DNA of 33,364 nt from Octopus bimaculoides (taxonomy: Eukaryota), in assembly GCF_001194135.2 (NCBI RefSeq), contig NC_068981.1, positions 103,872,640 to 103,906,003 of the forward strand, read 5' to 3'. The translations under genes were made by a program, and so were the position numbers. Position 1 is the stretch's first letter; every line of letters starts with the position of its first letter. The notes under the pieces were generated by a model. It saw nothing but the letters and a program-made list of their open reading frames with translations. It was not told the origin of the DNA and did no database searches. Below, piece after piece: positions 20,478 to 21,410 of the stretch.

Positions 20478-20655
20478 ACCTTTCTCTTCATAAAAGGTCC
20501 TAGAAATTTCACACTGCCTTAGTTTTGTTGACTCATTTTATTTAACACACACACACACACACCATTTATGTATAAGGAAAAGAAAATGGAGAAATTGACA
20601 TATAGATATTAATTTATTTAAATGAATCCAATTTCAAACAATATCCAACTCATAG

Positions 20656-20750
20656 AACCTACAATTGTTTCCATGTCCAATTAATTCAAATAAGAAAATT
20701 TAATTAAAGATTCATATTGAATATAGTTAATTGAGCATTTCATCAGGGTC
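20656..20750 (-). ncRNA. Type I hammerhead with long stem II (foldback 2, left arm)
   Basis: Minus strand reads GACC-CUGAUGA-A-AUGCUCAAUUAA...UUAAUUGGACAU-G-GAAA-CAAUU-GUA/GGUU. Confidence 0.72.
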
Positions 20751-21104
20751 AGAACTTGATAGAAAAAAAAAAAAAAACTACATCCCAATGTGCTGATTGA
20801 TCATTGGTAGACTCAGCATTAAATTCAGATGTATGTGCTTGTGCATTCTAATGTATTCTAAAAAAACTGTTACTTGTGTATATGTAATTTCATTTTATTA
20901 TTACCTAACGTATTCAGGTGTGTACATGTGTTAATGTGTTGTAAAACAAAGGAGCCATTAGGTGGCCTAAACAATATTTTAACGGTTTCTTTTTTTTTTT
21001 TTAAATACATTAGAATGCACAAGCGCACATATCAGAATTTAATGCTGAACCTACCAATGATTAGTCAATACATTGGGATGTAGTTCCTTTTTCTATCAAG
21101 TCCT

Positions 21105-21200
21105 GACCCTGATGAAATGTCCAATTAACTATATTCAGTATGAATCATTAACTAAATTTTTTTTATTTGAATTAATTGGACATGGAAACAATTGTAGGTT
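21105..21200 (+). ncRNA. Type I hammerhead with 12-bp stem II and 43-nt loop (foldback 2, right arm)
   Basis: GACC-CUGAUGA-A-AUGUCCAAUUAA(43 nt)UUAAUUGGACAU-G-GAAA-CAAUU-GUA/GGUU; palindromic stem III ACAAUUGU; cleavage A at 21196. Confidence 0.8.
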
Positions 21201-21410
21201 CTATGTGTTTGATACTGTTTGAAATTGAATTTGTTTTAATAAATTGGTGTCAGTATGTCAATTTCTCTGTTTTCTTTTTCTTATACGTAAATGATAATAT
21301 ACCCAAATAAATCAGTGTGAAGCTAACATCTTTTAGTATTTCATTGATACACTGGATAAAACCAGGGACCTTGGATGCTGACATCCCTTTAAGAGCTAGT
21401 TATATTTTTT

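What the first reader, a model, noticed from the sequence alone, without database searches (positions are those of the whole stretch)
20563..21293. Non-coding foldback element carrying two outward-facing hammerheads with an unusually long stem II
Seen in the sequence: about 310-bp inverted arms. Each arm has an intact CUGAUGA...GAAA...GUA core, a palindromic stem III (ACAAUUGU), an A.G mismatch at the base of stem II, and a 12-bp stem II (perfect in the right arm) with a 43-nt loop. Established: Penelope-like elements carry minimal type I hammerheads with short palindromic helix III in their terminal repeats and often insert as inverted, 5'-truncated pairs. Inference: this is a non-autonomous, ORF-less PLE-dependent element whose ribozyme has an expanded helix II. 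I do not recognise it as a described family.
Basis: partly seen in the sequence, partly recalled or inferred. Interest (0 to 1): 0.85.

Follow-up and report, generated by a model that had tools for sequence, protein, structure and literature searches.

The report
Inverted truncated Penelope tails with hammerheads
Two ~300-bp inverted copies of the tail end of a Penelope-like retrotransposon, each with a minimal hammerhead ribozyme motif whose second stem is unusually long; this is transposon debris of a kind described since 2014, not a new class of element.

Summary
Window 20563-21293 is a foldback with ~300-nt arms (86-88% identical) and a 128-nt spacer. Each arm carries an outward-facing type I hammerhead motif: intact CUGAUGA/GAA core, palindromic helix III ACAAUUGU, GUA cleavage triplet, A/G apposition at the base of helix II, and a 12-bp helix II with a 43-nt loop (perfect in the right arm only).

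An adjacent foldback (20091-20562) has the same architecture with an unrelated sequence. A solitary hammerhead of the same type lies at 18822-18855, and a decayed Penelope-like (PLE) RT remnant at 9422-11448.

PLE contigs fetched here carry hammerheads with the same unpaired N/N at the helix II base. One oyster locus (L014) is a 100%-identical head-to-head PLE pair with outward hammerheads 57 nt from each outer end.

The best reading is a head-to-head pair of heavily 5'-truncated PLE 3' ends, old (K2P about 0.14) and probably inert here. No other copy of the family could be retrieved, so two points stay open: whether the source was an autonomous PLE or a dedicated ORF-less parasite, and whether helix II covaries. 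The long helix II is a real outlier: the fetched PLE loci have 3-5 bp and the literature reports 6-8 bp. Interest is low to moderate.

The parts
20563..20866 (-). Left arm of the foldback: a 5'-truncated PLE 3'-terminal fragment. Its sense strand is the minus strand and its 3' end is at 20563.
   Evidence: 305-nt alignment, 85.9% to the right arm
20867..20994 (.). 128-nt spacer with no arm-to-arm similarity. Inferred to be the extra 5' part of the longer of the two copies, by analogy with L014.
   Evidence: analogy
20995..21293 (+). Right arm: a 5'-truncated PLE 3'-terminal fragment with its 3' end at 21293.
21105..21200 (+). Right-arm hammerhead motif: helix I 21105-21108/21197-21200 (4 bp), CUGAUGA 21109-21115, A 21116, helix II 21117-21128/21172-21183 (12 bp), loop 21129-21171 (43 nt), G 21184, GAA 21185-21187, helix III ACAAUUGU 21188-21195, A17 at 21196. 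The predicted cut is after 21196, 97 nt from the arm's 3' end.
20656..20750 (-). Left-arm hammerhead motif: CUGAUGA 20746-20740, helix II 20738-20727/20684-20673 (one C.A mismatch, one G.U), loop 20726-20685 (42 nt), GAA 20671-20669, ACAAUUGU 20668-20661, A17 at 20660. The predicted cut is 97 nt from the arm's 3' end at 20563.
20545..20562 (+). (CA)9 run. It is the AC-rich 3' tail of the neighbouring foldback's right arm, and the left arm of the studied foldback abuts it.
   Evidence: (D3)
20091..20562 (.). Neighbouring foldback of a different sequence family: arms 20091-20316 and 20337-20562 (226 nt, 87-91% identical, 20-nt spacer). Each arm carries an outward-facing hammerhead, CUGAUGA-U-GGGAUAU-cuuuu-AUAUCCC-U-GAA-A(C/U)A(A/G)CUGU-A (+ strand 20433-20472; - strand 20220-20181). 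The arms end in AC-rich tails.

Best explanation
The region is a relic of one Penelope-like-element (PLE) retrotransposition event. PLE reverse transcriptase/GIY-YIG endonuclease can cleave and prime on both DNA strands, which produces two cDNA copies joined head to head with their 3' ends pointing outward. Here both copies were truncated at the 5' end after about 300 nt; one may run about 128 nt further, which would account for the spacer.

Only the 3'-terminal part of the element survives. This is the pseudo-LTR segment that holds the minimal type I hammerhead, plus the ~97 nt between the ribozyme cut site and the point where reverse transcription started.

In the parent element, which is transcribed as a tandem, two sense copies of the hammerhead would pair through the palindromic ACAAUUGU to form an active dimer. 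In this foldback they cannot. The two motifs are on opposite strands, and any read-through RNA would fold into a long hairpin.

The insertion landed against the AC-rich tail of an earlier, similar PLE foldback (20091-20562). Both are old (about 12-14% arm divergence) and most likely inert.

Shown: the anatomy, the motif's non-randomness, the shared architecture with hammerheads on real PLEs, and a one-to-one structural analogue in an oyster genome.
Inferred: the single-event twin-priming origin, the identity of the spacer, and the inactivity.
For: (1) The motif and arms are as described, with chance expectation 0.003-0.037 per window.

(2) The same window holds other PLE material: a second foldback with the same build but unrelated sequence, directly adjacent; a solitary hammerhead of the same architecture at 18822-18855; and a decayed PLE ORF at 9422-11448(-), matching PLE RT proteins at E down to 2e-18.

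(3) Contigs encoding those PLE relatives carry hammerheads downstream of the RT/GIY-YIG ORF with the same plan: core, one unpaired N, helix II, one unpaired N, GAA, palindromic A..U helix III (L003, L009 twice at unit spacing 4724 nt, L010, L012).

(4) L014 (Saccostrea echinata genome) has a 1376-nt, 100%-identical inverted repeat. It consists of a long PLE copy with its ORF plus a head-to-head 5'-truncated inverted copy, and the outward-facing hammerheads lie 57 nt from each outer end. This is the same architecture with less truncation.

(5) Literature:
- PLE min-hammerheads have a long helix II, a 4-5 bp helix I and a palindromic helix III. Dual motifs 100-700 bp apart on opposite strands were ascribed to truncated PLEs (PMC4209133). 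Here the cores are 363 bp apart.
- An inverted 5'-truncated copy next to the unit is typical of PLEs (PMC8557442).
- Anolis Poseidon cleaves and extends both strands and starts reverse transcription in an AC-rich stem-loop 111-118 nt into the ORF, with the hammerhead cut 26 nt into the ORF. That places the insertion's 3' end about 85-92 nt after the cut (PMC11167929). Here the distances are 97 nt, and 72-90 nt with an AC-rich tail in the neighbour.
- PLEs tend to insert into or next to existing PLE copies (PMC6765202).
Against: - No RT or GIY-YIG coding remnant lies in or next to the foldback, and no other copy of this family could be retrieved. The link to an autonomous PLE therefore rests on architecture, not on sequence continuity.
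- Both arms lose similarity at the same inner point, a T/A run. That fits a discrete short unit at least as well as two independent truncations.
- The hammerhead core, helix I and helix III show 0 changes in 29 positions against 42 in 246 in flanks and loop (Fisher p = 0.011). Under purely neutral in-situ decay of twin copies this would be a roughly 1% coincidence.
- The G10.1-C11.1 pair called 'highly conserved' in PLE hammerheads (PMC4209133) is absent.
- Helix II is far longer than in any comparator.
- No cleavage data exist.
Confidence: 0.72

Rival explanations
1. One reading: the arms are full-length copies of a discrete ~300-nt ORF-less element, a retrozyme- or SINE-like parasite of PLE machinery, whose hammerhead has an expanded helix II. 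They were inserted as an inverted pair.
For: Both arms start at the same inner boundary, the T-run. No coding remnant is present. The core is better conserved between arms than the flanks, as expected if the two arms came from different selected source copies. Non-autonomous hammerhead elements derived from PLE pseudo-LTRs are documented in animals (PMC7229834; bioRxiv 10.64898/2026.07.22.740005). The window itself has a retrozyme-like tandem at 3234-3900.
Against: Described animal retrozymes are head-to-tail tandems with canonical hammerheads, not inverted pairs with minimal ones. No other copy was found to define the unit. The oyster locus shows that the inverted pair arises from an autonomous PLE. 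A snap-back or twin-priming event also gives coincident inner boundaries.
Confidence: 0.2
2. A foldback or MITE-type DNA transposon, or a local inverted duplication, in which the hammerhead-like motif is a coincidence or carries no retroelement meaning.
For: Long terminal inverted arms with a short spacer resemble foldback elements. The sub-threshold Rfam microRNA-precursor hits reflect only the hairpin shape.
Against: No target-site duplication is evident in the sequence flanking the outer ends (read; not searched systematically). The full motif is expected 0.003 times per window by chance, yet it occurs in both arms of two unrelated adjacent foldbacks, at a similar distance from the outer ends. 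The same layout is seen in a real PLE pair.
Confidence: 0.04
3. Two SINE-like retroposons inserted tail to tail. Read on the strand antisense to the hammerhead, each arm ends toward the centre in an A-run (A7 at 20860-20866, A13 on the other arm). On this reading the hammerhead sits on the non-transcribed strand and is meaningless.
For: A/T homopolymer runs sit exactly at the inner ends of both arms.
Against: It requires two independent insertions of the same element in opposite orientation at one site, and the same again for the neighbouring foldback, which has no clear A-tails. It leaves unexplained an intact hammerhead with a 12-bp helix II on the 'wrong' strand. No other copy of such a SINE exists in 33 kb, whereas the genuine SINE of this genome occurs several times.
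Confidence: 0.04

Closest known systems
Minimal type I hammerheads of Penelope-like elements (Cervera & de la Pena 2014, PMC4209133)
   Same: CUGAUGA...GAA core, open helix I of 4 bp, 2-bp helix III with a palindromic loop that allows dimerisation, an extra nucleotide after A9, a helix II longer than canonical, and occurrence as dual motifs 100-700 bp apart on opposite strands.
   Different: Helix II is 12 bp with a 43-nt loop, against 6-8 bp reported and 3-7 bp in my comparators. The G10.1-C11.1 pair is replaced by an A/G apposition followed by A-U. An extra nucleotide is also present on the 3' side of helix II.
Head-to-head PLE insertions (Craig et al. 2021, PMC8557442; Anolis Poseidon biochemistry, PMC11167929), seen directly in oyster locus L014 (GCA_033153115.1)
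   Same: Inverted copies with 3' ends outward, and a hammerhead a fixed short distance (57-97 nt) from each outer end. The studied foldback abuts a (CA)9 run and an earlier PLE copy; in L014 a (TA)n run lies about 40 nt beyond the outer end.
   Different: Here both copies are truncated to about 300 nt, so no ORF remains. The arms are 86-88% identical rather than 100%. No 30-40-bp 'tail' is seen.
Animal non-LTR retrozymes (Cervera & de la Pena 2020, PMC7229834; Li et al. 2026 preprint)
   Same: ORF-less, AT-rich, ~170-400-nt units with type I hammerheads, thought to derive from PLE pseudo-LTRs and to depend on PLE enzymes. A mismatch at the base of helix II (U.U) is reported for axolotl HHR_Amex2.
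   Different: Retrozymes are head-to-tail tandems with canonical hammerheads and loop-loop contacts, and they give circular RNAs. This is an inverted pair with a minimal hammerhead.
Rfam Hammerhead_1 (RF00163) and other Rfam hammerhead models
   Same: Same catalytic core.
   Different: No match even at E<=10. The models also miss the PLE-borne hammerheads in L003 and L009, so they do not cover this minimal subclass.

Membership tests
PLE-type minimal hammerhead ribozyme | Conserved core C3-U4-G5-A6-N7-G8-A9 ... G12-A13-A14, A15.1-U16.1, H17 not G | tested here: met
   Both arms: CUGAUGA, GAA, A...U, A17
PLE-type minimal hammerhead ribozyme | Type I topology with a short helix I (4-5 bp) | tested here: met
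   GACC/GGUU gives 4 bp including one G.U; helices II and III are closed
PLE-type minimal hammerhead ribozyme | Very short helix III with palindromic 15.2-16.2 and loop 3, allowing a dimer | tested here: met
   ACAAUUGU is a perfect 8-nt palindrome in both arms
PLE-type minimal hammerhead ribozyme | Extra nucleotide between A9 and 10.1 | tested here: met
   A21116 / A20739. A matching extra nucleotide (G) lies on the 3' side; the same N/N is seen in L003, L009, L010, L012 and in the window's other hammerheads
PLE-type minimal hammerhead ribozyme | G10.1-C11.1 closing pair of helix II ('highly conserved', PMC4209133) | tested here: not met
   The first pair after the extra nucleotides is A-U. 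Read without bulges it is A.G
PLE-type minimal hammerhead ribozyme | Helix II of about 6-8 bp with a small loop | tested here: not met
   12 bp plus a 43-nt loop, span 88 nt; comparators span 27-40 nt
PLE-type minimal hammerhead ribozyme | Covariation in helices across family members | tested here: inconclusive
   Only two copies exist. Helix II has two one-sided changes (one G.U, one C.A) and no compensatory change. The neighbouring foldback shows one compensatory C-G/U-A change in helix I
PLE-type minimal hammerhead ribozyme | Self-cleavage, as a dimer | not testable with these tools
   Needs in vitro transcription assays
Penelope-like element insertion | RT plus GIY-YIG ORF contiguous with the hammerhead-bearing repeat | tested here: not met
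   tblastn with 11 PLE ORFs hits only 9422-11448(-), 9 kb away and not contiguous. This is expected if 5' truncation removed the ORF
Penelope-like element insertion | Inverted 5'-truncated copy joined head to head, 3' ends outward | tested here: met
   Arm orientation from the hammerhead strand; same layout in L014
Penelope-like element insertion | Defined 3' terminus a short distance downstream of the hammerhead cut site | tested here: met
   97 nt in both arms; 72-90 nt in the neighbouring foldback; 57 nt in L014; about 85-92 nt derived for Anolis Poseidon
Penelope-like element insertion | Sequence homology of the arm to the 3' region of an autonomous PLE | tested here: inconclusive
   No homologue in the window, in the fetched PLE loci L001-L009 (L010-L014 were not compared), in metagenome or prokaryote-genome DNA scans, or in protein databases. 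The source genome and Repbase/Dfam were not searchable
Animal non-LTR retrozyme | Head-to-tail tandem repeats of 170-400 bp | tested here: not met
   Copies are inverted; no direct repeat of the arm exists
Animal non-LTR retrozyme | Canonical type I hammerhead (4-bp helix II, 6-bp helix I, loop-loop contacts) | tested here: not met
   Minimal architecture instead
Foldback / MITE DNA transposon | Target-site duplication flanking the terminal inverted repeats | tested here: inconclusive
   No duplication is evident in the flanks ...ACACACAC|CATTTATG and GTAAATG|ATAATATA (read); no systematic search was run

The most novel reading that the evidence does not exclude
The arms are full-length copies of an undescribed ORF-less family that parasitises PLE machinery. 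Its hammerhead has evolved an expanded helix II (12 bp plus a structured 43-nt insert) that does something the usual 3-8-bp stem cannot, for example stabilising the ribozyme or serving as the RT/endonuclease recognition module. The better conservation of the core than of the flanks between arms would then reflect selection on two different source copies.
Probability: 0.15. Interest if true: 0.45.

Novelty: new member of a known kind. Interest (0 to 1): 0.2.

Why it matters
The finding adds one more sequence family to the very large, heterogeneous set of PLE-associated minimal hammerheads. It also shows, within one 33-kb window, how densely such debris can sit: four hammerhead-bearing features (three of the minimal PLE type and one canonical-looking, retrozyme-like tandem) and a PLE ORF remnant.

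Two details may interest ribozyme specialists. The helix II here is far larger than any in the comparison set. And an unpaired N/N at the base of helix II recurs across unrelated PLE hammerheads, replacing the classical G10.1-C11.1 pair. Neither detail changes the picture of what PLE hammerheads are.

For annotation there are two practical lessons. Rfam models do not detect this subclass. And long hairpins of this origin produce spurious microRNA-precursor-like hits.

Tried and rejected
- **Rfam.** The scan at gathering score on the whole window and at E<=10 on 20000-21800 gave no hammerhead, only sub-threshold miRNA hairpin look-alikes. The control on PLE contigs L003/L009 also gave no hammerhead, so the negative result carries no weight.
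- **More copies in the window.** blastn with word size 7 and nhmmer with arm profiles found none.
- **More copies elsewhere.**
  - Exact 22-mer and 27-mer scans of JGI metagenome contigs returned 0 hits.
  - The scan of prokaryote genomes returned one hit, inside a Leeuwenhoekiella coding sequence with no CUGAUGA upstream; rejected as chance.
  - A word-indexed protein search with the 49-aa arm ORF found no candidate.
  - A full HMMER scan of 1.84 billion representatives gave four hits, all repetitive or multi-stretch sequences with no PLE domain (two are conceptual translations of tandem repeats); rejected.
- **Pfam.** The scan of the decayed RT segments found nothing. The remnant was confirmed instead through homologues.
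- **ORF straddling the ribozyme.** I considered an ORF starting at the AUG inside CUGAUGA, as in Anolis Poseidon. It is open for only 36 codons in the right arm and 20 in the left, with no homologue, so no claim is made.
- **Weak descriptor hits.** Hits at 10466(+) and 15543(-) have a 4-bp helix II and a non-palindromic helix III and were treated as chance.
- **Hammerhead in L005-L008.** An attempt to recognise one in the intergenic region of this PLE family gave only a partial motif with a non-canonical core; left unresolved.
- **Assembly artefact.** Rejected because the arms differ at about 14% of positions and the stretch 19886-22500 has no N.

Full report
**What is in the sequence**

The window is AT-rich (34% G+C) draft eukaryotic DNA with N gaps, many microsatellites and repeated SINE copies. 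From memory the SINE resembles one common in octopus genomes. That is only a lead, since the tools give no way to confirm the organism.

Between 20563 and 21293, the repeat finder reports three collinear inverted blocks. blastn joins them into a single 305-nt alignment at 85.9% identity, and MAFFT gives 88% column identity. The arms are 20563-20866 and 20995-21293, and the 128-nt spacer between them shows no arm-to-arm similarity. As RNA the stretch folds into one hairpin of about 300 bp (-388.7 kcal/mol, z = -46).

**The hammerhead motif**

In the right arm, helix I is GACC/GGUU. It is followed by CUGAUGA (21109-21115), an A, a perfect 12-bp helix II (21117-21128 with 21172-21183) closing a 43-nt loop, and a G. 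Then come GAA, the palindrome ACAAUUGU (21188-21195) and A17 at 21196.

The left arm mirrors this on the minus strand, with CUGAUGA at 20746-20740 and A17 at 20660. Its loop is 42 nt, and two changes on the 5' strand of helix II give one C.A mismatch and one G.U pair.

A descriptor scan requiring the core, helix II flanked by one unpaired nucleotide on each side, a palindromic helix III, H17 other than G and at least 3 bp of helix I expects 0.003 hits per window-sized Markov sequence. A looser descriptor expects 0.037. The motif is therefore not a coincidence.

Rfam reports no hammerhead at gathering score or at E<=10. It also fails on the hammerheads carried by genuine Penelope-like-element contigs, so its silence says nothing here.

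- **A second foldback.** Directly upstream, 20091-20562 is another foldback (226-nt arms, 87-91% identical, 20-nt spacer). It has no sequence similarity to the first. Both of its arms carry an outward-facing hammerhead of the same plan: CUGAUGA-U-GGGAUAU-cuuuu-AUAUCCC-U-GAA-A(C/U)A(A/G)CUGU-A. The arms end in AC-rich tails, and the studied foldback abuts the (CA)9 tail of the right arm.
- **A solitary hammerhead.** One lies at 18822-18855(+): UUGACAA-U-CUUUUU/AAAAAG-U-GAA-ACCGGU-C with a 7-bp helix I. It uses the U3/A8 core covariant described for PLEs (PMC4209133).
- **A decayed PLE ORF.** At 9422-11448 on the minus strand there is a remnant whose pieces match PLE RT proteins at E down to 2e-18. 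The closest database protein sits on a contig with a GIY-YIG ORF downstream.
- **A retrozyme-like tandem.** At 3234-3900 a degenerate ~300-bp tandem carries a canonical-looking type I hammerhead on the minus strand.

Hammerhead-bearing retroelement debris is therefore common in this stretch of genome.

**Comparison with real PLEs**

Starting from the window's RT remnant I collected PLE proteins and fetched thirteen of their contigs. Four PLE families carry a hammerhead in the non-coding region after the RT/GIY-YIG ORF: L003, L009 (twice, 4724 nt apart, one unit length), L010 and L012. All share the same plan of core, one unpaired nucleotide, helix II, one unpaired nucleotide, GAA and a palindromic A...U helix III. 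The apposed nucleotides are A/A or U/U.

The 'A.G mismatch' of the finding is thus a recurrent trait of this kind of hammerhead rather than damage. A U.U mismatch at the same place is also reported for one axolotl hammerhead family (PMC7229834). In those comparators helix II is 3-5 bp and the whole motif spans 27-34 nt. The neighbouring foldback has 7 bp and 40 nt, and the studied motif has 12 bp and 88 nt. The claim of an unusually long helix II is therefore correct, both against this sample and against the 6-8 bp reported in the literature.

**The closest structural analogue**

L014 comes from the Saccostrea echinata genome. It holds a 1376-nt inverted repeat with 100% identical arms (3986-5361 and 7083-8458). 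tblastn shows that one side is a long PLE copy with its ORF at 6001-7884, and the other is a head-to-head, 5'-truncated inverted copy covering ORF residues 362-628.

Each arm carries an outward-facing hammerhead whose cleavage site is 57 nt from the outer end, and a (TA)n run lies just beyond. The 1721 nt between the arms is simply the extra 5' part of the longer copy. Truncating both copies to about 300 nt would produce the structure in this window, spacer included.

**Mechanism**

Published work supplies the steps:
- PLE insertions are heavily 5'-truncated and often have an inverted 5'-truncated copy joined to them (PMC8557442).
- Purified Anolis Poseidon protein cleaves and extends both DNA strands. 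It starts reverse transcription internally, in an AC-rich stem-loop 111-118 nt into the ORF, with the hammerhead cut 26 nt into the ORF. An insertion therefore ends about 85-92 nt after the cut (PMC11167929). Here that distance is 97 nt in both arms, and 72-90 nt with an AC-rich end in the neighbouring foldback.
- PLEs tend to insert into or beside earlier PLE copies (PMC6765202), which fits the two abutting foldbacks.
- Cervera and de la Pena already reported dual minimal hammerheads 100-700 bp apart on opposite strands and ascribed them to truncated PLEs. Here the two cores are 363 bp apart.

I therefore read the region as one twin-primed PLE insertion reduced to its two 3' tails.

**Activity**

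A hammerhead with a 2-bp helix III needs a second sense copy to form the extended helix III. In the foldback the two motifs lie on opposite strands, so one transcript contains one sense and one antisense copy. These pair with each other: -388.7 kcal/mol for the hairpin against -19.9 for the isolated right-arm motif. The left-arm helix II is also damaged.

Kimura distances between arms are 0.143 here and 0.125 in the neighbour, so both are old. The ribozymes are most likely relics at this locus. This is an inference; no assay was possible.

**What remains open**

No other copy of the arm was found. The searches covered the window, the fetched PLE loci L001-L009, JGI metagenome contigs, prokaryote genomes (one chance hit), and protein collections queried with an arm ORF. 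The source genome and transposon libraries were not searchable.

I therefore cannot say whether the parent was an autonomous PLE or a dedicated ORF-less parasite, and covariation in helix II cannot be scored. Between the two arms there is none, only two one-sided changes.

Both arms lose similarity at the same T/A run. And the core, helix I and helix III show no change in 29 positions against 42 in 246 elsewhere (p = 0.011), which is unexpected for neutral decay of twins. In the neighbouring foldback the core-to-GAA block is likewise unchanged, but helices I and III carry five changes, one pair of them compensatory, so overall conservation there is no better than background. I give the dedicated non-autonomous reading about 0.2.

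**Verdict**

It is a new member of a known kind. Its one noteworthy feature is an outlying helix II.

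Noticed in passing
window 20091-20562: A second foldback directly adjacent to the finding, unrelated in sequence. Its 226-nt arms each carry an outward-facing minimal hammerhead (7-bp helix II, U/U at its base) and end in AC-rich tails. One compensatory C-G/U-A change in helix I distinguishes the arms.
   Followed up: yes
window 18815-18862 (+): A solitary PLE-type hammerhead with the U3/A8 core covariant: UUGACAA-U-CUUUUU/AAAAAG-U-GAA-ACCGGU-C, 7-bp helix I. 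No ORF remnant or repeat partner was found; an N gap starts about 340 nt downstream.
   Followed up: partly
window 3234-3900 (- strand motif, CUGAUGA at 3429, H17 at 3395): A degenerate ~300-bp tandem repeat (2 copies, ~78% identical) carrying a canonical-looking type I hammerhead (CUGAUGA-GCUG-aaguag-CAGC-GAAA...); the second copy is decayed to CUGGUGA. It resembles a non-LTR retrozyme dimer. Rfam finds nothing at E<=10.
   Followed up: partly
window 9422-11448 (-): A decayed Penelope-like RT ORF remnant (matches PLE ORF2 residues ~4-553, E down to 2e-18). It has an internal 348-bp tandem duplication (9924-10624) and is cut off on its 3' side by SINE copies. No GIY-YIG part or hammerhead was found with it.
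   Followed up: partly
window 8650-9380, 21430-21560 and other sites: Multiple copies of one SINE (...GGCAGTGCTTCAGCACGGCTGCAATCAAATGACTGAAAC-like). From memory it resembles a SINE abundant in octopus genomes; the organism could not be confirmed.
   Followed up: no
L003 3935-3967; L009 387-420 and 5111-5144; L010 2673-2702; L012 3852-3885: Hammerheads on PLE contigs from marine metagenomes all use the U3/A8 core and have one unpaired nucleotide on each side of helix II (A/A or U/U) in place of the classical G10.1-C11.1 pair. Helix III reads AC..GU in all of them.
   Followed up: partly
L014 3986-8458 (Saccostrea echinata, GCA_033153115.1): A 100%-identical 1376-nt inverted repeat formed by a PLE copy and a head-to-head 5'-truncated copy, with canonical-core hammerheads (10-bp helix I) 57 nt from each outer end. 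It looks like a very recent insertion.
   Followed up: yes
protein hits P0049, P0063, P0104, P0115: PLE RT/GIY-YIG proteins are deposited under bacterial names (Campylobacteraceae MAG, Candidatus Thiodiazotropha, Solemya velum gill symbiont). These are probably host (bivalve) DNA binned into symbiont assemblies.
   Followed up: no
L003-L009, L011-L013: These PLE relatives have a second, upstream ORF of 420-490 aa with no Pfam match, often overlapping the RT ORF by a few codons. This suggests frameshift-coupled expression.
   Followed up: no
window 20251-20402 and 20782-21079: Sub-threshold Rfam hits to plant and animal microRNA-precursor families (54-56 bits against cut-offs of 135-245). They merely reflect the long hairpins of the two foldbacks and could mislead automated annotation.
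   Followed up: yes
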